From Hyaloraphidium curvatum SAG 235-1 (lineage: Eukaryota; Fungi; Monoblepharomycota), in the NCBI GenBank assembly GCA_025558095.1, contig JAIVFI010000023.1, positions 434,001 to 498,000 on the forward strand: a stretch of 64,000 bases of DNA, given 5' to 3'. The notes under the pieces are model-generated. The model searched no databases, was not told the origin of the DNA, and saw only the letters and a program-made list of their open reading frames with translations. Within the stretch, counting starts at the first letter, position 1, and every line of letters starts with the position of its first letter. Position numbers and translations under genes: made by a program. Positions 45,125 to 55,224 of the stretch are shown piece by piece.

Positions 45125-48100
45125 CTACCAGCCGTCCCGAAGCACCACCTCGAGCTGGTCGGCGAAGAAGTCCGCGTCCTCGACCGAGATGCACATCGGC
45201 GGCTTGATCTTGAGCACGTTGCTCCGCTCTCCGGTCGGCTGGCAAATCACGCCGAGCTCCCTGAGCCTGTCGCAGATGGCCCCGCACTCTTTGGTCGCCG
45301 GCTCGAGCGTTTCCCTGTCCCTGACAAGCTCGGCGCCCAGGTACAGCCCGATGCCGTGCACCGCGCCGACTATCGGGTACCGCTCCTTCATGTCGGCCAG
45401 CCTCTCGAGGAGCCTGGACCCCACCCGCGCCGCGTTCTCTTGCAGCCCCTCGTCCCGTATGGCATCGAGCACGGTGCACCCGACTACGCACGAGACGGGG
45501 CTCCCTCCCGCGCTGGAGAAGAAGTTGCCCTGCGCCGAAAACGCGTCGGCGATCTCCTTCCGGGTGATCACCGCGCCGAGCGGGTGCCCGTTCCCGAGCG
45601 CCTTGGCGACGGTGATGATGTCCGGCACGACCGCGGGGCGGGCGAGCTCGTGCGCCCAGAACGCGGCGCCGGTGCGGGCCAGGCCGACCTGCACCTCGTC
45701 CGCGATCGCGTAGCCGCCGGCCTCGCGGACCGCGGCGTAGGCGGCATGGAGGTAGCCGTCGGGGAGCACGACGCCGCCGGCGTTGCCGAAGAGGGGCTCG
45801 CAGATGAAGGCGGCGGGGGGCTTGCCGTCCGTGGCCAGTGAGCGGATGAGACCAGTGACGTCGGCGGCGTAGCCGGCGGCTGCTTCGGCGCCGCGGTAAG
45901 TGCCGCGGTAGCTGTTGGGCGCAGCTGCGAGGTGGATCCAGTCGGGACGCGTCTCAAGGGCCCGTGGATTGTCGTATAGCGACGTGGTGACGGAGTCGGA
46001 CAAGAAGGTCCTGCAAAGCAGTCAGTGACAACTCAAGCCCTGTCCAAAATGTGCTCACCATCCGTGATATGCCTCCCGAACGGCCACAACGTCCTGCCGC
46101 CCGGTGATAGTCCGCGCCATGTGAAGTGCAAGATCGACGGCTTCCGACCCGCTGTTGACGAGGAACACCGTGTCGAGCCCCTCGGGTGCCAACTTCGCCA
46201 GGCGCTCGCAGAGCTCGGCAATAGCGGCATAGTGGAACCTGGAGTTGGTGTTGAGCAGCCTCATCTGCCTCGACACAACCTCCGCCAGCTTCGGGTGGGA
46301 GTGCCCGATCGCGGCAACGTTGTTCACCATGTCCAGGTACGTCCTCGCGTCGCAGTCCACCAGGTGCGCCCGCCAGCCGCGCTCGATCCGCATCGGATCG
46401 GCGTAGTAGTGCTCCTGCAGCCGTGCGAAAGTGGCGTCTCGGCGGGCCAGCAGGGCGCGGGCGTCTTCGGGAACGTAGGAAGCCTGAACGCCAAGAAGGA
46501 CGTCCGGGGACGGGCACAGCGATGTCCAGGCTCCACGCCACACGGGGGCGACGAACTCGGGGGGTTCGAGATCGCGAGCGAGGCAAAGGCGGATGCGCAG
46601 CACACCGGAGCTTGAAACGCGTCCCAGTGGATCGCCAACTGCAACAGAAATTCCGGCGGCAGGAGCCGATTCAGCACCACGAATGAAAACACGACCCGGG
46701 CCACCATCCAAGACGAGGTGATCGCCGTGGTGAGCCACAGTTCCCGTCCAGGGTGCACGAATCTCGGTGCCCGCCCCAGCTAACACGTCGATGCCCAGCG
46801 GCACCGTGGCAAGTGTAACGCTGCTGTTCACCACGGTCCGCGTAAGCCGCGGCTCGGCCCAGCGCGTACACGCGGCATGTGTTGGCGATTCCGCGGCGGC
46901 TTTGCGGAGGATCCGATCGTCCTCAGCGGCCCCGTGCAGATGGTTGCCCGAATGAAGCTTTTCCGACGTCGAAGACAGGTCCACCACAGCAAACGTGCCG
47001 TGCAGCGACGGCAAAAGCGGGGCGGCCGAGGCCAGCAGCGCCAACTGTTCTGCCACCTTGGGCGAAGGGCCCTTTCCGAGAGCGCGCCGCAAGGCCTCCT
47101 CCCCGGCAACAAAAGGAACAGAGCAGGCCATTTTCCAAATCCTCGTCTCGGATTCCAGCGCTCCCGTCGCAGATTCGTTGTCGGGATCCAGCTTGGTTTG
47201 GTGCTCACCGCACGCCACGAGGACCGCACCGCGGAGCACCACCAATGGCCAGAAGGCCGAGATCTCGGCGTCAGTCAGTGGCACGAGCTGGTTGAAGGAA
47301 ACTATCGCCGGAATGACCGCCATGGGATCGCCATCGCCGTGCCTGAGTACGCAAGAAGCTGTTACGGCAAGCTCCCCGACGCGCCAGCTGCGGCCAAGGT
47401 CCCCGAAATCAATAATCCCGTTCGGTCGGAGCCGGCCCGCAGCATCGGGAGAGGCGACGACATTGTCGTCCGTGATGTCGCCGTGGATGGTCTGGATCGC
47501 AAGGTGCGGAATCAAAGGCTCCAGAGCTCCCAGCACACGGTCCACGCTTGCCGCAACGGCCGCCCGCTTGGCGGGGTCCGCGATGGAGCCCAACAAGGCG
47601 CGCGTGACGGCCGCCGCGTTCCGCAGGTCCCACTGTCCCATCGGCTGGTCGAGGCCGGGGTGGTCAAAGTCGGCCAGCGCCGAGACGGAGCGGCCGGCAA
47701 GCCTCCCGAGGTCCTCGACGACGCAAGGTGCCAGGTAGCTCTTCTGCGGCAGAGGAACGCCTTCCAGGTAGGTGACCACGCGGACAAGTAGCGTCTCCTC
47801 GCCGATGCGGGCTTCGCGGATGAAACTCCCGTCGAGCGACTGAACGGGCTGAGGAACGGCAAAGGGCTCTGCGCTCCCTGCGACGTGCGCCGCGATGTGG
47901 AGCAAAGCGGAATCCTGAGCTTCCAGCGACAACCGCGGCCAGGACCGGTTCGCTATCTTGAGCACGAGGCGGCCGCCGGGCTTTCCGACGCGGAAATTTC
48001 TGTCCTGGTTGGATCCGAGCTCTCTGATTTGCAGATCGCCGGACAGGCCCCAGAGGGACGAAGCAAGCGCCGCGGCGCCCGCATCGTCGATGACGGGCCG

Positions 48101-48133
48101 CGGAAAAAGCTCAATCCCGGCCGCATCGCTCAT
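45125..48133 (-). CDS. Fusion: APH/hydroxylysine-kinase-like phosphotransferase + M23-like linker + class III aminotransferase/phospho-lyase; intron 46011-46058
   Basis: ELGSNQDRNF, IHGDITDDNV, IIDFGD; LGIDV..GTEIRAPWTGTV; YLDMVNNV, NSGSEAVDLA, AYHGW, IADEVQVG, VAKALGNG. Confidence 0.92.
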
Positions 48134-48293
48134 TTTCGCGCGTTTCTGGCGCAACAGGCGCTCGGAAGCGCGTTTTCTTAGTGGAGCAAGGGCGACGAAA
48201 ATGGTGTGTGATCGACGAGATCGACCCGCCCGTGGCGACTTCTACAGCATTGTGTTTGCCAAACGCCAAGATCGCTGACCGGGAGGGAGTCTA

Positions 48294-49627: not shown

Positions 49628-50549
49628 ATGCCCTCCATGGCGGCGACACCGCAGACCCTGACCGCGGCGCTCTGGGCACACGTCAAGGGCCGGCACCGGC
49701 GGTCAAACAACCTCGTTAACCTGAAGCTCGTTGGGGCGCTGAGCTCGCGTTCCGTCTACGCGCAACTCGTGCGCGATTTCTACGAGGTCTTCAGAACGTT
49801 CGAATCGCTGTGGGATCAAGAGCTGCGCGATTCGAAAGAGCGCGACTCGGGCCGTCTCCTGCGTGGCGCTGGCGAGGCGTTGGCGCTCTTTGGCCGCACC
49901 AAGGCATTCGAGAGGGACCTCCACTACTACTATGGGAGCGATTGGGAAACGGTGTCGAAGCCCACGCCAACGGCTCTGGCCTATTGCGACCACATAAAGG
50001 ACGTCGCGAAACAAGATCCGGACTTGCTGCTCTGCTTCATTTACGCGTTCTACTCGGGTCTCATGGCCGGGGGCTGGGTGCTAAGGAGGAAGATCATACG
50101 CGTGGTCTGGCGGCTGCCCAGTGAGATCGACTGGGACAAGAGGTCCGGCGGTTCAGTGAGTTCTTGAAGATGCCCGCCTAAAGAATGGACCACCAACAAC
50201 GGGCCCAGGGGACGTCGATCTTTGAATTTTCGCTTCCGAGCGCCCCGCGCGAGCTGGCGGAGATTCACCTCGTGCGGACACAGCTCAAGGCGATCCTCGA
50301 TGCGGTGCCGTGGCGGGAAGCTGGACCTGACAAGCTTCAGAAGATGAAGGAAGAGCTCGTCCGCGTGTTCGAGTGGAACGATATGGTTATCTCCAACGTT
50401 CCTGGTGAGCCGCTGTTATGTTGATTATAGGACGCTCATTGACCGTCGACGACGCTTTCACAGGCGGCCTTTACGAGTTTGTGATGGCGTGGATCTGGTG
50501 GATTGTTGGATTGGTCTTGCTGATCTTTCTTTGGCTCATGTTTCGCTGA
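49628..50549 (+). CDS. Heme oxygenase-like protein with C-terminal TM anchor, 2 introns
   Basis: Proximal His (KGRH), FYEVF, RTKAFERDLHYYYG, YCDHI, YSGLMAGG, VFEWN, hydrophobic tail. Confidence 0.85.
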
Positions 50550-50623
50550 TGACATAGACCTTTACACTTCCTTTGATGCTACTTCCATGGTTGGGCAGTT
50601 CCGTTAACACTTCCTTACAAGCT

Positions 50624-52265
50624 TCAGCAATTGATCTCCGGGTAGCAGCTTGGCGGGCGGTAGCCGACAAACAGTCCGATGTTGACGGCGACGTAGATCA
50701 CTGCAAGGTTTTGTTATTCTCCTTCCCATCAGCTTCTCGCGCAACCCACCGAGAGCAACAACAAAGGTGATCAGCGAAAGCGACACCAGAAAGTCGCGGT
50801 ACGAATCTCCCTTCGCAATCGAGCAAGGCCCGTATCCCCAGCACACCCTTGCAGGCTTCGAAGGAACCTCGTCCGGATCGGAGACGTCGCCATTGATTGC
50901 GACAGCGGTCGTCTTTCGCTGCGACGCCGTGCTGACATGGGGTGACACGGACGAAGCCTCCTCGGCGAAAGCAGCAGCCTTTCCTTCGATTTCGGAGGAC
51001 GACTTCTCCGCGGCGAGTTTTTCCTGCTTGGCCTCGTACTGTATGAGGAGCCATCGTTCCACGATGCTCTCGATGAAGATGAGGCCCACCAAGACCATGG
51101 TAGTGATATTAATGTAGTCCCCGACTGAAAGTGATGTAGGAACTGTTGTGATGGGATGGATGGTAAGCAGCAGGCCCCGTGCAAGAAGAGATGGATGGGA
51201 ACCCACAGCCTAGGAAGGCGTTCAAGGAATTGATGTTGAGCACAACGACGAAGATGCTATGAAGGTGGTTAGCTTCCGCCCGGCGATCAAGAGCTTGTTG
51301 CGTCTCACCTGGCGCCGAGGATGCCCATCCTCGCATCAAAGTGGTCCGTGACGGGGAGAACAAGGGCGCCCAAGCTCATGGCGAAGCTCAAATAAGAGGG
51401 CAACATTATCTGCACAAAATTCGTCGTATCGTCTCGTGCCAATTCGAAAACGATGGTAACGCGGTCAAACTGAGGCACCTGGGAAAGGTACGTTGTGCCA
51501 ATCAGAAAACGATGGTAACGCGGTCAAACTGACGCACCTGAGAAAGGTACGTTTCGCTGTACTCCACGACGCTTCGCAAGACGGTCGGCGGACCGCTGCG
51601 GAGCGCGAGGGCCGGGTCCATCGCAACGTCCGGGGCAACCACGCTGTTCTTGTCGTCGTAGACCAGCTTGAGTGCAGTTGTGTCCGGGAGCGCCTCGATG
51701 ATCAATCGCAGATAGGTCTCGTCGAAGGGATAGTATCTCAGATCCTCGTCGACCCTGATGTGGGGGACATTCGTCGTGGAGAGGTTGGAGTTGGGACGCT
51801 CCCTCTATAGATGCCGCGAGCCTACCTGGCTGTCGCCTGAACCTTCATCGTGCTCCAGTGAACAAAGGCGGGGCCGAGCTGGGCGGCGGGAGGAATCGTA
51901 CGGTACTCCTGGCCCGACACCGACAGGCCTCCCGGCTTCAAGTTGAGGATCTCGACAGTGTCCCAAAGGGTCACGTTTGCGTCGCAGACCATGGTGATCC
52001 ACCCTTCCCAGACCGCGCTGTCGTCCGCGAAGGAGAAGCCGAGCAGAGACATCGTGTACGTCTCGAAATGGCACTCCGTGGCAGTCTCGTTCGTCTGTCT
52101 GGCGGCAATGTCCCGCTGGACAGGTCGACCGGTCTTGCCGGCGTCGCGGCCCACGGCCCCTCGCCGGTAGGCGGCGGCCTCGACCCGCCCCGCCGCCAAA
52201 AAGACGAGGAGGACGAGCAGGGAGGCGCGGAGGAGGAAATCGGGCAGACTTCGGCGGTGTCCCAT
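50624..52265 (-). CDS. Pentameric ligand-gated ion channel subunit, Cys-less (GLIC/ELIC-type), 5 introns
   Basis: Signal peptide; Pro-loop DLRYYPFDETYLRL; pre-M1 Arg (FELAR); M1 FVQIMLPSY; M2 FDARMGILGASIFVVVL; M2-M3 FPTSLSVGDY; M3; long loop; M4. Confidence 0.85.
51436..51553. repeat. Direct tandem duplication, 2 x 59 bp, 4 mismatches
   Basis: 51436-51494 gtgccaattcgaaaacgatggtaacgcggtcaaactgaggcacctgggaaaggtacgtt vs 51495-51553 gtgccaatcagaaaacgatggtaacgcggtcaaactgacgcacctgagaaaggtacgtt. Confidence 0.97.
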
Positions 52266-52355
52266 GTTAGGGATGTTGGTGTGGCTGATGGCGAGGGACG
52301 CCGCCGATGAAACCCTCAGCCCCTGAACGACCGATTCCTCAAAGCAACATCCACT

Positions 52356-54386
52356 CTATTCGCTGAAGCAGCACAGGATTGCATCCCACATCAACTCCGA
52401 AGCCGCAATCCCCAGCGCTGCGGTGTTCAGGCGCGGATCATCGATCTCGTTCGTCGAAACCATGTACAGCTGGTCGCCATCCTGCGGGCAGTGGAGCGGC
52501 TGTATGCCGCGGGCCATTGAGCTGTGAACCTGGCGCGCCAGCTGCGTCAGGAGCACATCGGGAAGCCTGACGTTGGTAACGACCAGCGAGATCGTCGTGT
52601 TGCCCATGATTCCTTGAGCTGGAGTCGCAAGTTCTTGAAGAAGCTCCTCCGCGGAGGCGATCATGTCCTTCCTGTTGCTGCCCGGCTCAGCCACCCACAC
52701 CGTGTGCTGCGACGGATCAAGAGAGCCGCGGACGATCTTGTTGGAGCGGTCGTAGACGGCACCCAGGGCGTTGATGACCGTGAAGCACGCCAAACGGATG
52801 CCGCCGGCCAGCAATCGGTAAGCCCCGCCTTGGCCAGCACGCTCGCCCCGTCCGAAAAGCTTGCCGGCCGTAGCGGAACGACCCGCACCGTAGCTGCCAA
52901 GGGGAAAAATCCCAGGCTTCGCGGCACGAAATGCGGCGCGACCCAATTCCTTGTCTGGATGAATCGCATTCTCTCGACCCCGGAAATCGTAGATGATGGC
53001 ACCCCGAACGACGGGCAGGTTGTTCCACGTGTAGTTGTAGCGCCTTTTCTTGAACAGCTCGGCCAAGACTCCCGTTGAGGCTTCCAGGCCATAGTACGAG
53101 CCCCCTGCGAAACAGATGGCATCCACAGGGCCGTCTCCAGGCTGGAAAAGCCCCGGGGCACCGCCGCGGACGTCGTGCGCGCACGTTGCTGTGGTTCCAA
53201 AATGGAACACCGTGCACCCCGTCGGTCCTGCGGCGTACTCGGCGACGCCGATCGAGAAGGCGGGCCAGTCAAACTCGAGCTTCCTTGTGGGCTCCGGAAT
53301 CGAAGGATCCAAAGAAACGAGGTCGTTTGTGAGCGCGATCGGCTCCCCACGAGGATAAGGCAGTGGCGCTCCGGAATCTCTCCATCGAACGAGGTGATCG
53401 CGAAGCTCCGACACCTTGTGCTCTCCTCCGAACTCGTCCACGCGCCGGGCGTAAAGTTCCTCGCACAAGCGCTTCTCCAGCGTAGCTTGCACTTCGTTGG
53501 CACGGGGTCGGTTCCGCATGAACCGGTTCTCCATCTCTTCATCCGAATTGATGCCTGACATTCCGCCGAGGATGAAGCCCACCATTTTGCCGGCCAGCCA
53601 CACCGCATCCGGCAGAAAGTTCATGCGATTATCGCAGTCCAGGTAGGTACGCGACTGAAGGTACTCCTTTCCAGCTTCGCGCGAATAGAAGCCCCACCAC
53701 GAGTCCCAAAGAGCCCAACACTCCATCAGACCGCTGCCGTACTCGATGTGCCCTTCGTTGGTGAACACGCGGTCCGATAAAATGGCCTGTACCGGCGTTT
53801 GAAAGGAGGAGGACACGAGAATCACGCCCGGCGGTGGCGACACCACCGTGTCCCCGTGGTGGTTGTGCACGTGGTAAGCCTCCTTCGTAGTCCGCAGTGC
53901 CTCTCGCCCCTCGGGCGTTAGCGCAGCCCTGACCGCGGCGTTTTCCCAGCCCGTGAACGACTTCATCACGTTCCTCCCGCCCGGGTTCAAGGCCCACGCG
54001 ATGACTTGGTGGCCGAAAGACAGACCAATCCACCTCGTTCGGGAGACATTGTCCGCGATGTACTGCTCCAGCTTCGCGACATACGGCACGTGGTGATCGT
54101 AGGCCCCTTCATCTGCCCCCGTCACGAAGATGCAGTCGTACGCGCTCAACGCGTCGCCCTGGGGCCAGCTCTCCGGAACGTGAAAGATGTACTCGTCGAA
54201 AGAGAATCCGGCGACCTCGTCCGCAAAGTAACGTGCCGCCGCGAGCTCAAAGATGGCCTGGAGCCGGTATCGCGTCCCTCCAGCGCAGTCGGGGGCGTAG
54301 GCTTCGTGTTCAATCATGAAGTCCGGAGGATCCGGCAGCATGACCGCAACACGGATCGTGCGCGGCTGCGGCGGGGCGGAGGTCAT
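52356..54386 (-). CDS. Intronless fusion: class I glutamine-amidotransferase-like domain + NylC/DmpA (peptidase P1/S58) Ntn hydrolase
   Basis: N-term IFVTG, IGLSFGHQ, HGDTV, EGHIEY; C-term GPTGCTV, DVRGG, AICFAGGS, AIIYDF, PDKELGRAA, GNTTIS, QVHSSMARGIQP, DGD. Confidence 0.9.
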   Translation of the reverse strand: MTSAPPQPRTIRVAVMLPDPPDFMIEHEAYAPDCAGGTRYRLQAIFELAAARYFADEVAGFSFDEYIFHVPESWPQGDALSAYDCIFVTGADEGAYDHHVPYVAKLEQYIADNVSRTRWIGLSFGHQVIAWALNPGGRNVMKSFTGWENAAVRAALTPEGREALRTTKEAYHVHNHHGDTVVSPPPGVILVSSSFQTPVQAILSDRVFTNEGHIEYGSGLMECWALWDSWWGFYSREAGKEYLQSRTYLDCDNRMNFLPDAVWLAGKMVGFILGGMSGINSDEEMENRFMRNRPRANEVQATLEKRLCEELYARRVDEFGGEHKVSELRDHLVRWRDSGAPLPYPRGEPIALTNDLVSLDPSIPEPTRKLEFDWPAFSIGVAEYAAGPTGCTVFHFGTTATCAHDVRGGAPGLFQPGDGPVDAICFAGGSYYGLEASTGVLAELFKKRRYNYTWNNLPVVRGAIIYDFRGRENAIHPDKELGRAAFRAAKPGIFPLGSYGAGRSATAGKLFGRGERAGQGGAYRLLAGGIRLACFTVINALGAVYDRSNKIVRGSLDPSQHTVWVAEPGSNRKDMIASAEELLQELATPAQGIMGNTTISLVVTNVRLPDVLLTQLARQVHSSMARGIQPLHCPQDGDQLYMVSTNEIDDPRLNTAALGIAASELMWDAILCCFSE

Positions 54387-54655
54387 TTTCAGGGAAGTGG
54401 GGAGGGAGCAACTCGGTTCGGGCGCCGCCGCGCGGCAACGATCACTCCGCAAGGCAGTTCCGGATCCGCATCAACGGTCCCGAATGCGCGAGAGCAGGAG
54501 GAGCAAAGCAAGCTGCACCTATGTTGGATATGGCAACGAAGACGTTGAGGATACTCTCTGGGTCTTGATCCTTCAATCAGCTTCAACGATGTACTGAGCT
54601 CGCCCTAGGACGAATGGAAGCCACTACGTCCTGCAGAGTGTCCCGGCCGCCTTCT

Positions 54656-55224
54656 TCATCGCGGGACCTCTCGTTCCACGCGGTGTAGCCTCTCGACTTC
54701 GTCCGGGTCCGCGCTGTTTTCGGCCTCGCGCATCACGGGCGGGTGAAGATCTACCGAGTCCAGCCGAGGCGACTTCGGAGGCTGAGCAGACTGCTCGACA
54801 TGGTGGAGCGCCTTGAAATGGAAGCTGTAGTAAGCTTCCGCACTCAAGGAGGCTTGAACGTGGTGCTCACGTTAACTTCGGCAGTGGACCCCTTGTTTTC
54901 GATCTCCTTGGCCACGGCAGGGTACATGTCGGGCTGCGTGTCGTCATACTGCGATGCGACAGCGTGAATGGGCACAAGTAGGGGACAGAGAACGGTTCCG
55001 GACCCACCTCCATGCTGTTGAGGGTCGTGTCGACGCCCCGAACAGGGAAAAGTCGCGCGTCAGTCCACCGAAGGAAGTCGAGGCAAAACGGGCGAGACTC
55101 GCGTCTTGATCAGTTCCTCCTGGAGCTGAGAAGTCTTGGCGTCCACCTTCCCATGCGGCTCGGGGGTCTTGGGTCGCTCATTCACGGCGTCCCGGAGTGC
55201 TTCGGGATGCAAGTCATCCGACAT
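54656..55224 (-). CDS. Small hydrophilic protein, multi-exon with a probable 7-nt microexon
   Basis: MSDDLHPEALRD...LIK, microexon 55014-55008, YDDTQPDMYP..., ...LHHVEQ...EVPR*. Confidence 0.45.

What the first reader, a model, noticed from the sequence alone, without database searches (positions are those of the whole stretch)
52356..53345. Eukaryotic homolog of the nylon hydrolase NylC with intact catalytic residues
Seen: the C-terminal ~330 aa follow NylC (6-aminohexanoate-oligomer endohydrolase) motif by motif: LEFDWPAFSIG, GPTGCTV, AICFAGGSYYGLEA, AIIYDF, PDKELGRAA, SATAGK, GQGGAYR, GN|TTIS, QVHSSMARGIQP, DGD, ALGIAASELMWDA. Known: NylC is an Ntn hydrolase that self-cleaves at Asn-Thr and uses Thr as nucleophile with supporting Tyr, Lys, Asn and an Asp-x-Asp pair; equivalents of all appear present. 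The comparison to NylC is from memory. Inference: an intronless, bacterially derived polyamide/amide hydrolase in a fungus, of biotechnological interest.
Basis: partly seen in the sequence, partly recalled or inferred. Interest (0 to 1): 0.82.

Follow-up and report, generated by a model that had tools for sequence, protein, structure and literature searches.

The report
Fungal NylC-type amidase fused to GATase-like module
An early-diverging fungus (Hyaloraphidium curvatum) expresses an intronless gene whose C-terminal half is a bacterial-origin relative of the nylon-oligomer hydrolase NylC with every catalytic residue intact, fused to a fungal gamma-glutamyl-peptidase-like module whose catalytic Cys is replaced by Ser; this is a new domain architecture, but nylon hydrolysis by it is untested.

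Summary
Window 52356-53345 (minus strand) encodes 329 aa that match crystallised NylC at E 3.7e-70 (about 45% identity). A high-confidence model superposes on NylC at TM 0.88-0.90. Y146, K189, N219, N266|T267, D306 and D308 are all identical.

This is only the C-terminal half of a 676-aa intronless ORF (ATG 54386, stop 52356-58) in Hyaloraphidium curvatum. RNA contigs lie colinear on the gene. They do not support the public 1114-aa model, which skips the stop through a 36-nt "intron" and joins the next gene.

The N-terminal 347 aa are a class-I GATase / gamma-glutamyl-peptidase (GGP1-like) module. Ser replaces the nucleophile Cys in all seven known copies. Its nearest relatives are fungal.

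The NylC-like half sits inside a large bacterial "P1 family peptidase" radiation, beside but not within the narrow NylC lineage. That fits an old bacterial acquisition. A second, intron-bearing, stand-alone paralog exists, and two other eukaryotic contigs carry the same fusion.

Most likely it is a self-cleaving Thr-nucleophile oligoamide/peptide hydrolase. Nylon-oligomer activity is plausible (about 40% of diverse family members have it) but untested, and the native substrate is unknown.

The parts
52356..54386 (-). Complete intronless CDS: 676 codons plus the TAG stop at 52356-52358. The predicted precursor is 74.4 kDa.
   Evidence: ORF. The first in-frame ATG is at 54386, the same start as the public model P0001. 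The RNA contig is colinear over 52384-54700 with no joints. Homologs P0002 and P0003 and the bacterial proteins end at the homologous position.
53637..54386 (-). N-module core (residues 1-250): class-I glutamine-amidotransferase / C26 gamma-glutamyl-peptidase fold.
   Evidence: AF2 model of the module has pLDDT 94.4 and pTM 0.94. The best Foldseek hit is Arabidopsis GGP1 9k7i, TMt 0.82. The family profile A2 matches GGP1 at E 1.4e-53. NCBIfam amidotransferase hits are weak and below cut-off.
54018..54020 (-). Ser123, at the position of the GATase/GGP1 nucleophile Cys (motif GLSFGHQ).
   Evidence: Alignment: all 7 monoblepharid-type modules have Ser and all 15 nearest GATase relatives have Cys. 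Coordinates.
53742..53750 (-). His213-x-Glu215, the other two members of the GATase triad (motif GHIEY).
   Evidence: H213 is invariant and E215 nearly invariant in alignment A2.
53373..53612 (-). Helical extension of the N-module (residues 259-338, four long helices). It is absent from ordinary ~250-aa GATases and is part of the module family.
   Evidence: DSSP of the models. It is present in the stand-alone Gonapodya P0222/P0004 repeats and in the own-genome C9 copy.
53289..53372 (-). Inter-domain linker (residues 339-366). Model confidence is lowest at 347-349.
   Evidence: pLDDT is below 50 at 347-349. Full-length pTM is 0.63 although both domains score above 90.
52359..53345 (-). NylC-type P1/S58 Ntn-hydrolase domain (residues 348-676).
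52596..52601 (-). Predicted autocleavage site Asn596|Thr597 (equivalent to NylC N266|T267). Thr597 would become the N-terminal nucleophile of an 80-aa, 8.8-kDa beta chain. The alpha chain is residues 1-596, 65.6 kDa.
   Evidence: Alignment. Residue numbering and masses. Roles in NylC from PMC6021441. T is present in 216 of 217 bacterial homologs and N in 198 of 217.
52860..52862 (-). Lys509 (equivalent to NylC Lys189, a presumed catalytic residue).
   Evidence: PMC6021441.
52770..52772 (-). Asn539 (equivalent to NylC Asn219, a presumed catalytic residue).
   Evidence: Invariant in 217 of 217 homologs.
52989..52991 (-). Tyr466 (equivalent to NylC Tyr146).
   Evidence: Most bacterial homologs have Phe here (164 F against 50 Y). 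NylC, its Nonomuraea proxy and the three fusions have Tyr.
52473..52481 (-). Asp636-Gly-Asp638 (equivalent to NylC Asp306 and Asp308).
   Evidence: D is present in 215 and 216 of 217 homologs. The role of the Asp pair in autoprocessing is from my own knowledge of Negoro et al.; I did not re-read it here.
52354..52389 (-). The 36-nt GT..AG 'intron' of the public 1114-aa model, which removes the last 11 codons and the stop and joins the next gene. I judge it an annotation artefact.
   Evidence: Deduced by comparing P0001 with the DNA. No RNA contig shows this joint, and the two genes are separate contigs. It is shorter than the five verified introns next door (49-71 nt). The skipped C-terminus is conserved in homologs.

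Best explanation
The gene encodes a probably cytosolic 74-kDa two-domain amidohydrolase. The C-terminal domain is a NylC-type member of the P1/S58 (DmpA/NylC) Ntn-hydrolase family. It descends from a bacterial 'P1 family peptidase' gene acquired by an ancestor of Hyaloraphidium. By homology it assembles into dimers or tetramers and cuts its own chain between Asn596 and Thr597. It then uses the freed Thr597 amine and hydroxyl, with Lys509, Asn539 and Tyr466, to hydrolyse internal amide bonds of linear oligoamides or unusual peptides. Nylon-oligomer hydrolysis would be a promiscuous side activity. The N-terminal module is a lineage-specific offshoot of the fungal GGP1-like class-I amidotransferase (gamma-glutamyl peptidase) family. 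It has gained a helical extension and has Ser in place of the nucleophile Cys. It stays attached to the alpha chain and most likely binds, or slowly hydrolyses, a gamma-glutamyl-type amide on the same substrate. Shown here: homology, fold, residue conservation, transcription, lack of introns, the fusion and its conservation, and nesting among bacterial sequences. Inferred: autocleavage, oligomerisation, substrate class, cytosolic location and the role of the N-module.
For: The domain matches NylC at E 3.7e-70 with all seven functional residues identical. The full-length AF2 model has pLDDT 91.7. Its C-domain superposes on NylC at TMt 0.88-0.90 and rmsd about 2 A, ahead of Nyl50 (0.83), ThnT (0.63) and BapA/DmpA (0.52-0.57). 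Thousands of bacterial homologs reach 51-55% identity. In the tree, the three eukaryotic fusions plus exon 2 of the own-genome paralog group at 93/80 inside a bacterial clade with Cyanobacteria, Actinomycetota, Chloroflexota and Abditibacteriota. A single eukaryotic clade is not rejected (AU p 0.32). The transcript contig is colinear with the genome, and the neighbouring gene's five introns are spliced out in the same run. GC3 is 0.74, like the neighbouring genes. The fusion is conserved at 59-61% identity in two other eukaryotic contigs, with catalytic residues kept. The N-module has the GGP1 fold and its family profile matches GGP1 at E 1.4e-53. Its nearest Cys-type relatives are fungal: Hyaloraphidium, Synchytrium, Jimgerdemannia, Chytridiales and Gonapodya. 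Ser, His, Glu and the S1 Gln of GHQ are fixed in all seven modules. Of 95 diverse family members, about 40% hydrolyse nylon, with no relationship to phylogeny (PMC11601465).
Against: There is no biochemical data on this protein or on any eukaryotic homolog. The GGP1 C100S mutant has no detectable activity (PMC12958103), so the N-module may be catalytically dead. The full-length model gives no confident inter-domain packing (pTM 0.63), so cooperation between the two domains is unsupported. Bacterial gene neighbourhoods are inconsistent (ABC transporters, M16/M81 peptidases, amidase, FKBPs) and give no clear native substrate. The RNA contig stops 26 nt before the stop codon, so the 3' end is not covered. 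The donor lineage is unresolved, because the relevant part of the tree is a polytomy.
Confidence: 0.75

Rival explanations
1. The public 1114-aa model is right: the NylC-like protein continues, through a 36-nt intron that removes its stop, into the downstream multi-pass membrane protein, making one three-part protein.
For: The NCBI protein P0001 has this structure. The proposed intron has GT..AG ends. No RNA contig covers 52274-52383, so the junction region is not directly observed.
Against: The two genes assemble as separate RNA contigs that end at 52384 and 52273, and no joint is reported at 52389/52354. A 36-nt intron is shorter than the five verified local introns of 49-71 nt. The residues the intron would delete (the MWDAIL motif onward) are conserved in NylC, in the bacterial homologs and in P0002/P0003, which all terminate there. 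The downstream gene has its own ATG at 52265, 8 nt inside its contig's end.
Confidence: 0.04
2. The N-terminal module is a pseudoenzyme. With Ser for Cys it no longer hydrolyses anything and serves only as a substrate-binding, regulatory or oligomerisation domain for the NylC-type hydrolase.
For: The C100S mutant of the closest solved relative, GGP1, has no detectable activity (PMC12958103). The module has drifted so far that Pfam GATase no longer detects it in the Hyaloraphidium copy. It occurs as three tandem copies in one Gonapodya protein, which is more typical of binding modules.
Against: Ser123, His213, Glu215 and Gln127 are strictly conserved in all seven copies across Hyaloraphidium, Gonapodya and two unidentified eukaryotes, which argues for continued selection on the active site. 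Ser-His-Glu triads do work on this fold in peptidase family S51 (my own knowledge).
Confidence: 0.4
3. The NylC-like domain is not a horizontal acquisition but an ancient eukaryotic gene retained only in this fungal lineage.
For: The gene has host-like GC3. A paralog carries a spliceosomal intron. The acquisition, if any, predates the split of three fusion-bearing lineages. Other eukaryotic genomes could not be searched exhaustively here.
Against: Among 5.8 billion proteins, the full-length search found only these three fusion proteins as eukaryotic relatives. No eukaryote-named protein appears among the 120 listed bacterial or metagenomic hits of the domain search, most of which carry no name. 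The eukaryotic group sits on a short stem inside one bacterial sub-clade rather than as sister to all bacteria. At 53-55% identity to bacterial proteins, it is as close as bacterial phyla are to each other.
Confidence: 0.1
4. The stretch is bacterial contamination or a mis-assembly in the fungal genome.
For: It resembles bacterial proteins strongly and has no introns.
Against: It is in one ORF with a fungal-type module. It lies on a 699-kb contig. A gene with five spliced GT..AG introns starts about 90 bp downstream. The gene is present in the organism's RNA run. Two other eukaryotic assemblies carry the same fusion, one with an intron at a position shared with a Hyaloraphidium paralog.
Confidence: 0.01

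Closest known systems
NylC, 6-aminohexanoate-oligomer endohydrolase of Arthrobacter/Paenarthrobacter sp. KI72, Agromyces and Kocuria (PDB 3AXG, 5Y0L, 7YU0)
   Same: Same fold (TMt 0.88-0.90, rmsd about 2 A) at about 45% identity. The N|T autocleavage site and Thr nucleophile are identical, as are Lys189, Asn219, Tyr146 and Asp306/Asp308. The C-terminal end is at the same place.
   Different: This protein is eukaryotic and carries a 347-aa N-terminal GATase-like module in place of NylC's short N-terminal tail. It belongs to a neighbouring bacterial sub-clade: the NylC proxy Nonomuraea scores 386 bits to NylC against 240 for this protein and groups elsewhere in the tree. Activity on nylon oligomers is untested.
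Bacterial 'P1 family peptidase' of about 320 aa, for example Calothrix sp. NIES-2098 (P0116), Gaiellaceae (P0121), Abditibacteriaceae (P0166)
   Same: These are the closest sequence relatives (53-55% identity over 97-100% of the domain) and fall in the same tree clade, with the same catalytic residues.
   Different: They are stand-alone single-domain proteins of unknown native function in varied operon contexts. None has a GATase partner fused or adjacent.
Nyl10, Nyl12 and Nyl50, nylon hydrolases from a 95-enzyme diversity panel (PDB 9Z0A, 9CXR; PMC11601465, PMC13015463)
   Same: Same superfamily and tetrameric Ntn-hydrolase design. They show that nylon hydrolysis is widespread in the family, so this protein falls within the sequence range of proven nylonases (176 bits to Nyl12, 108 bits to Nyl50).
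   Different: They are more distant from this protein than NylC is. All are bacterial single-domain enzymes.
DmpA, BapA and ThnT (other P1/S58 members: L-aminopeptidase D-Ala-esterase, beta-peptidyl aminopeptidase, pantetheine hydrolase)
   Same: Same Pfam family PF03576 and alpha-beta-beta-alpha Ntn fold with self-cleavage.
   Different: They are much more distant (TMt 0.52-0.63, 14-28% identity). DmpA and BapA use a Ser nucleophile and act as exopeptidases (my own knowledge).
Arabidopsis gamma-glutamyl peptidase 1 (GGP1, MEROPS C26; PDB 9K7I-L), compared with the N-terminal module
   Same: Same class-I GATase fold (TMt 0.82). The family profile matches at E 1.4e-53. His and Glu of the triad and the Gln of the GHQ S1 site are kept.
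   Different: The nucleophile is Ser, not Cys, and C100S inactivates GGP1. The module has an extra 80-residue helical extension, is fused to an Ntn hydrolase, and is only 16-18% identical to GGP1.

Membership tests
P1 / S58 (DmpA-NylC) Ntn-hydrolase family | Sequence match to the family model above the curated threshold | tested here: met
   PF03576 at 51.6 bits against a cut-off of 23.9.
P1 / S58 (DmpA-NylC) Ntn-hydrolase family | Alpha-beta-beta-alpha Ntn fold | tested here: met
   AF2 model has pLDDT 91.7. Foldseek TMt to NylC is 0.88-0.90, and Nyl50, ThnT, BapA and DmpA are also hit.
P1 / S58 (DmpA-NylC) Ntn-hydrolase family | Internal self-cleavage site with Thr/Ser nucleophile at the new N-terminus | tested here: met
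   GN|TTIS aligns with NylC N266|T267. Actual autoprocessing cannot be tested with these tools.
NylC-type subfamily (as opposed to the DmpA, BapA or ThnT types) | NylC is the closest characterised member, and the NylC catalytic set is present (Thr267, Lys189, Asn219, Tyr146, Asp306, Asp308) | tested here: met
   240 bits to NylC against 176 to Nyl12, 108 to Nyl50, 75 to the DmpA-like chain and 66 to ThnT. All six residues are identical.
NylC lineage in the narrow sense (NylC-p2/A/K and close actinomycete relatives) | Falls in one exclusive clade with NylC | tested here: inconclusive
   NylC itself could not be placed in the tree because no tool provides its sequence by reference. Its proxy Nonomuraea (386 bits to NylC) groups with Variovorax/P0012 at 97/95, apart from the eukaryotes. 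Forcing the fusions and Nonomuraea together costs 21.6 lnL, AU p 0.038, which is marginal.
Nylon hydrolase (EC 3.5.1.117) as a function | Hydrolysis of 6-aminohexanoate oligomers or PA6/PA66 | not testable with these tools
   The prior from the literature is about 40% of diverse family members, with no link to phylogeny (PMC11601465).
NylC-type quaternary structure | Dimer or tetramer assembly, which is required for autocleavage | not tested
   Known for NylC and Nyl10/12/50 (PMC6021441, PMC13015463). Not modelled here.
Class-I glutamine amidotransferase / C26 gamma-glutamyl peptidase (N-module) | Class-I GATase fold | tested here: met
   Model pLDDT 94.4. GGP1 TMt 0.82, and many GATases are hit at E below 1e-8.
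Class-I glutamine amidotransferase / C26 gamma-glutamyl peptidase (N-module) | Cys-His-Glu catalytic triad | tested here: not met
   Cys is replaced by Ser123 in all seven modules. His213 and Glu215 are kept. I therefore do not file it as a working C26 cysteine peptidase or glutaminase.
Class-I glutamine amidotransferase / C26 gamma-glutamyl peptidase (N-module) | Match to Pfam PF00117 above threshold | tested here: not met
   The Hyaloraphidium copy gives no PF00117 hit at E up to 0.1. A Gonapodya repeat does hit (45.9 bits), and phmmer links the module to PF00117 proteins at E 1e-18 to 1e-10.

The most novel reading that the evidence does not exclude
The fusion is a true two-active-site enzyme. 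In it, a Ser-type gamma-glutamyl-peptidase-like head and a NylC-type endo-amidase head cooperate on a natural non-alpha-linked polyamide or isopeptide substrate, for example poly-gamma-glutamate, gamma-glutamyl oligomers or similar microbial polymers met by a saprotrophic freshwater fungus. If so, it would give the NylC family its first physiological polyamide substrate and provide a natural Cys-to-Ser switch in the C26/GATase fold.
Probability: 0.12. Interest if true: 0.8.

Novelty: new variant of a known kind. Interest (0 to 1): 0.5.

Why it matters
NylC-type enzymes are the main scaffold for enzymatic nylon recycling, and every characterised member is bacterial. I found no paper on a eukaryotic NylC-type enzyme. 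This locus shows that the family has entered and been domesticated in an early-diverging fungal lineage. There it duplicated, gained an intron in one copy, and in the other copy fused to a lineage-specific Ser-variant gamma-glutamyl-peptidase-like module. That fusion is a Rosetta-stone hint about the unknown native substrates of the whole family. It is also a ready eukaryotic sequence for nylonase panels. In addition, the work corrects a public gene model that merges two unrelated genes. The biotechnological value should not be overstated, because thousands of bacterial homologs are equally close to NylC.

Tried and rejected
1. NylC itself in the tree. pOAD2 is not in the plasmid collection, and no tool returns PDB sequences by reference. 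I therefore left NylC's own sequence out and used Nonomuraea L015 as a proxy, after checking its 386-bit match to NylC.
2. The genome-contig scan for named close relatives returned a single Pseudomonadota MAG at 43% identity, so no donor could be named.
3. Complex prediction of the N-module against the C-domain gave 'no answer' (score 0.00). This is neither support nor evidence against docking.
4. Bacterial gene neighbourhoods showed no conserved partner and no adjacent GATase, so context gives no substrate.
5. Synteny of the fusion gene with the downstream membrane-protein gene in the two other fusion contigs: none by tblastn.
6. The accession numbers of the two Logan runs appear in no paper, so the organisms behind P0002 and P0003 remain unidentified.
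7. Bacterial contamination and the 1114-aa merged model were considered and rejected (see the rival explanations).
8. Spliced paralogs (C20 NylC-like, C9 N-module) were handled exon by exon. The two C20 exons are therefore separate rows in the tree, which weakens their placement.
Full report
**Observation.** Nyl12 follows at 176 bits, Nyl50 (9CXR) at 108, a DmpA-like chain at 75 and ThnT at 66. It passes Pfam PF03576. Counting along the printed alignment, NylC Y146, K189, N219, N266|T267, D306 and D308 are matched by identical residues. In the 676-aa numbering these are Y466, K509, N539, N596|T597, D636 and D638. PMC6021441 gives autocleavage at Asn266/Thr267, Thr267 as nucleophile, and Lys189 and Asn219 as presumed catalytic residues. 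The role of the Asp306/Asp308 pair is from my own memory of Negoro's work.

**Organism and gene model.** The identical protein start is found in NCBI's [quoted passage not shown] on a 699-kb contig. The window is G000:C23:434001-498000. The first in-frame ATG is 54386 and the stop is 52356-58, giving 676 aa and 74.4 kDa.

The public model is 1114 aa. Comparing it with the DNA shows that it removes a 36-nt GT..AG segment (52389..52354) holding the last 11 codons and the stop. It then reads on into the next gene, whose own ATG is at 52265.

One public run holds the locus. It is a transcriptome, because its contig over the downstream gene lacks five GT..AG introns of 49-71 nt. It gives two separate contigs:
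- one covering 50500-52273, spliced;
- one covering 52384-54700 and 455 nt further upstream, colinear with the genome and without any joint.

The gene is therefore transcribed and intronless, at least up to 26 nt before its stop. Nothing supports the merge, and the residues it would delete are conserved in NylC and all homologs. The hole at 52274-52383 leaves the exact 3' end open.

**Fold.** A full-length AlphaFold2 model (49-row alignment A1) has mean pLDDT 91.7 but pTM 0.63. The only very low-confidence segment is 347-349, so the model shows two well-defined domains on a flexible linker. Foldseek places the C-domain on NylC at TMt 0.88-0.90, rmsd 1.7-2.5 A and 43-46% identity. The next hits are Nyl50 (0.83), ThnT (0.63) and BapA/DmpA (0.52-0.57).

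**Relatives and origin of the C-domain.** Searched alone, the domain finds 3211 proteins at E below 1e-20. The best 120 are bacterial or metagenomic proteins of about 320-360 aa at 51-55% identity, called "P1 family peptidase" or, by JGI, "6-aminohexanoate-oligomer endohydrolase".

I built a 69-row maximum-likelihood tree (IQ-TREE, LG+C20, rooted on two 31%-identical P1 proteins). The three eukaryotic fusion domains group with exon 2 of a second Hyaloraphidium copy at 93/80. This group lies within a poorly resolved bacterial clade that holds Calothrix, Abditibacteriaceae, Gaiellaceae, other Actinomycetota and Chloroflexi proteins. One clade for all eukaryotic rows is not rejected (AU p 0.32).

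NylC's own sequence could not be entered, because no tool gives it by reference. I used Nonomuraea gerenzanensis as a proxy: it scores 386 bits to NylC, against 281 for a clade-A bacterium, 240 for the fungal domain and 202 for a clade-B bacterium. Nonomuraea groups with Variovorax/P0012 at 97/95, away from the eukaryotes. An exclusive fusion-plus-Nonomuraea clade costs 21.6 log-likelihood units (AU p 0.038, marginal).

The domain is thus NylC-type but lies beside the narrow NylC lineage, not in it. GC3 (0.74) matches the neighbouring genes. Together with the restricted eukaryotic occurrence, this fits an old, fully ameliorated bacterial acquisition. The donor phylum is unresolved.

**A second copy.** Contig C20 (221413-222549) of the same genome carries a stand-alone NylC-type gene at 42-48% identity. 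It is interrupted by a 54-nt GT..AG intron with an in-frame stop. It keeps Lys, Asn, Thr and the Asp-Gly-Asp motif. It has Ser instead of Asn before the nucleophile and Phe instead of Tyr146, and it sits on a very long branch.

**The N-terminal module.** Residues 1-347 give only weak, sub-threshold amidotransferase hits and no Pfam hit.

An exhaustive phmmer search of 1.84 billion representatives finds just three proteins at E below 1e-30: the query's own protein, a Gonapodya prolifera protein with three tandem copies of the module, and the fusion P0003. It then finds about 250-aa PF00117 proteins at E 1e-18 and weaker. The nearest of these are fungal: Hyaloraphidium, Synchytrium, Jimgerdemannia, Chytridiales and Gonapodya. 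The word search adds a 348-aa stand-alone Gonapodya copy. The own genome has another copy on contig C9 with at least four introns.

The module model (pLDDT 94.4) is closest to Arabidopsis gamma-glutamyl peptidase GGP1 (TMt 0.82), and the family profile hits GGP1 at E 1.4e-53.

All 15 nearest relatives have the nucleophile Cys (G-x-C-F-G-H-Q), while all seven monoblepharid-type modules have Ser. His, Glu and the Gln of GHQ are kept. In GGP1 that Gln binds the substrate's alpha-carboxylate, and the C100S mutant is inactive (PMC12958103).

The module also has an 80-residue helical extension that stand-alone copies share.

**The fusion.** Two Logan contigs (SRR26194948 and SRR23967301, organisms unidentified) encode the same two-domain protein at 59-61% identity over its full length. 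P0002 contains a read-through intron. It lies in phase 1 of the codon that follows the Gly-Ala of the GA[D/K]EGAYD motif, exactly where the Hyaloraphidium C9 stand-alone copy has an intron.

The N-module is therefore an old, intron-bearing resident of this fungal lineage. The fusion to the bacterial-derived domain predates the split of three lineages, and the Hyaloraphidium fusion gene has since lost the intron.

**How it most likely works.** By homology, the C-domain oligomerises and cleaves itself at N596|T597, giving an alpha chain of 65.6 kDa that carries the N-module and a beta chain of 8.8 kDa. It then hydrolyses internal amide bonds of linear oligoamides or unusual peptides with Thr597. 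This step is inferred from residue and fold conservation only.

Nylon-oligomer hydrolysis is plausible. [quoted passage not shown] For the same reason it is neither special nor the native role.

The N-module keeps a GGP1-like S1 site with a Ser. I rate it roughly 60:40 as a Ser-type (slow) gamma-glutamyl or other amidase, or an acyl-binding head, against a dead scaffold.

There is no signal peptide: strand beta1 starts at residue 9. There is also no PTS1, which suggests a cytosolic enzyme (inference). Bacterial neighbourhoods give no consistent clue to the native substrate. They include branched-chain or peptide ABC transporters, M16 and M81 peptidases, an amidase and paired FKBPs.

**Known versus new.** The P1/NylC family, its mechanism and its promiscuous nylonase activity are known. 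The new points are:
- a eukaryotic, domesticated NylC-type gene;
- its fusion to a lineage-specific Ser-variant GGP-like module, found in only three proteins among billions;
- the correction of the public model.

No paper found here mentions eukaryotic NylC-type enzymes.

**Limits.**
- No biochemistry exists for this protein.
- NylC was placed in the tree only by proxy.
- Eukaryotic genomes other than this one could not be searched.
- The inter-domain docking test gave no answer.
- The 3' end of the transcript is not covered.

Noticed in passing
It has five short GT..AG introns (skips 50700-50750, 51142-51207, 51256-51309, 51474-51534, 51753-51825; 49-71 nt) that are confirmed in an RNA contig. 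Pfam found no channel domain in that part of P0001 at E up to 0.01, so its identity is unverified. The 59-nt skip confirms that the intron noted in s1-697338 is spliced.
   Followed up: partly
G000:C20:221413-222549 (+), locus L005 1111-2247: A second, stand-alone NylC-type gene lies in the same genome. It has a 54-nt spliceosomal intron, Ser instead of Asn before the Thr nucleophile and Phe instead of Tyr146, and it sits on a very long branch. It may have a changed function.
   Followed up: partly
G000:C9:98318-99552 (+), locus L008: A stand-alone copy of the Ser-variant GATase-like module has at least four introns and a long Ala/Pro-rich N-terminal extension. One of its introns shares position and phase with an intron in the fusion gene of an unidentified eukaryote (L002 about 906-1007).
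   Followed up: partly
P0004 (Gonapodya prolifera JEL478, 831 aa) and P0222 (348 aa): Gonapodya has the Ser-variant module as three tandem copies in one protein (the third copy is cut short) and as a single-copy protein on the same 1.49-Mb contig. No NylC-type domain is attached.
   Followed up: no
window 46055-48154 (minus strand): A 699-codon ORF combines an APH-type phosphotransferase domain with the start of a class-III aminotransferase (Pfam).
   Followed up: no
L020 4209-6963 and L023 4125-7053: In two planctomycete-like metagenomic contigs, the closest bacterial P1 peptidases sit directly after two tandem FKBP-type isomerase genes and before a Ser/Thr kinase gene. This is a conserved arrangement of unknown meaning.
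   Followed up: no
window 54387-55155 (minus strand): The RNA contig carrying the fusion gene continues about 770 nt upstream of the ATG and contains at least one short upstream ORF near 54655. This is either a long 5' UTR or an overlap with a neighbouring transcript; contigs cannot tell which.
   Followed up: no
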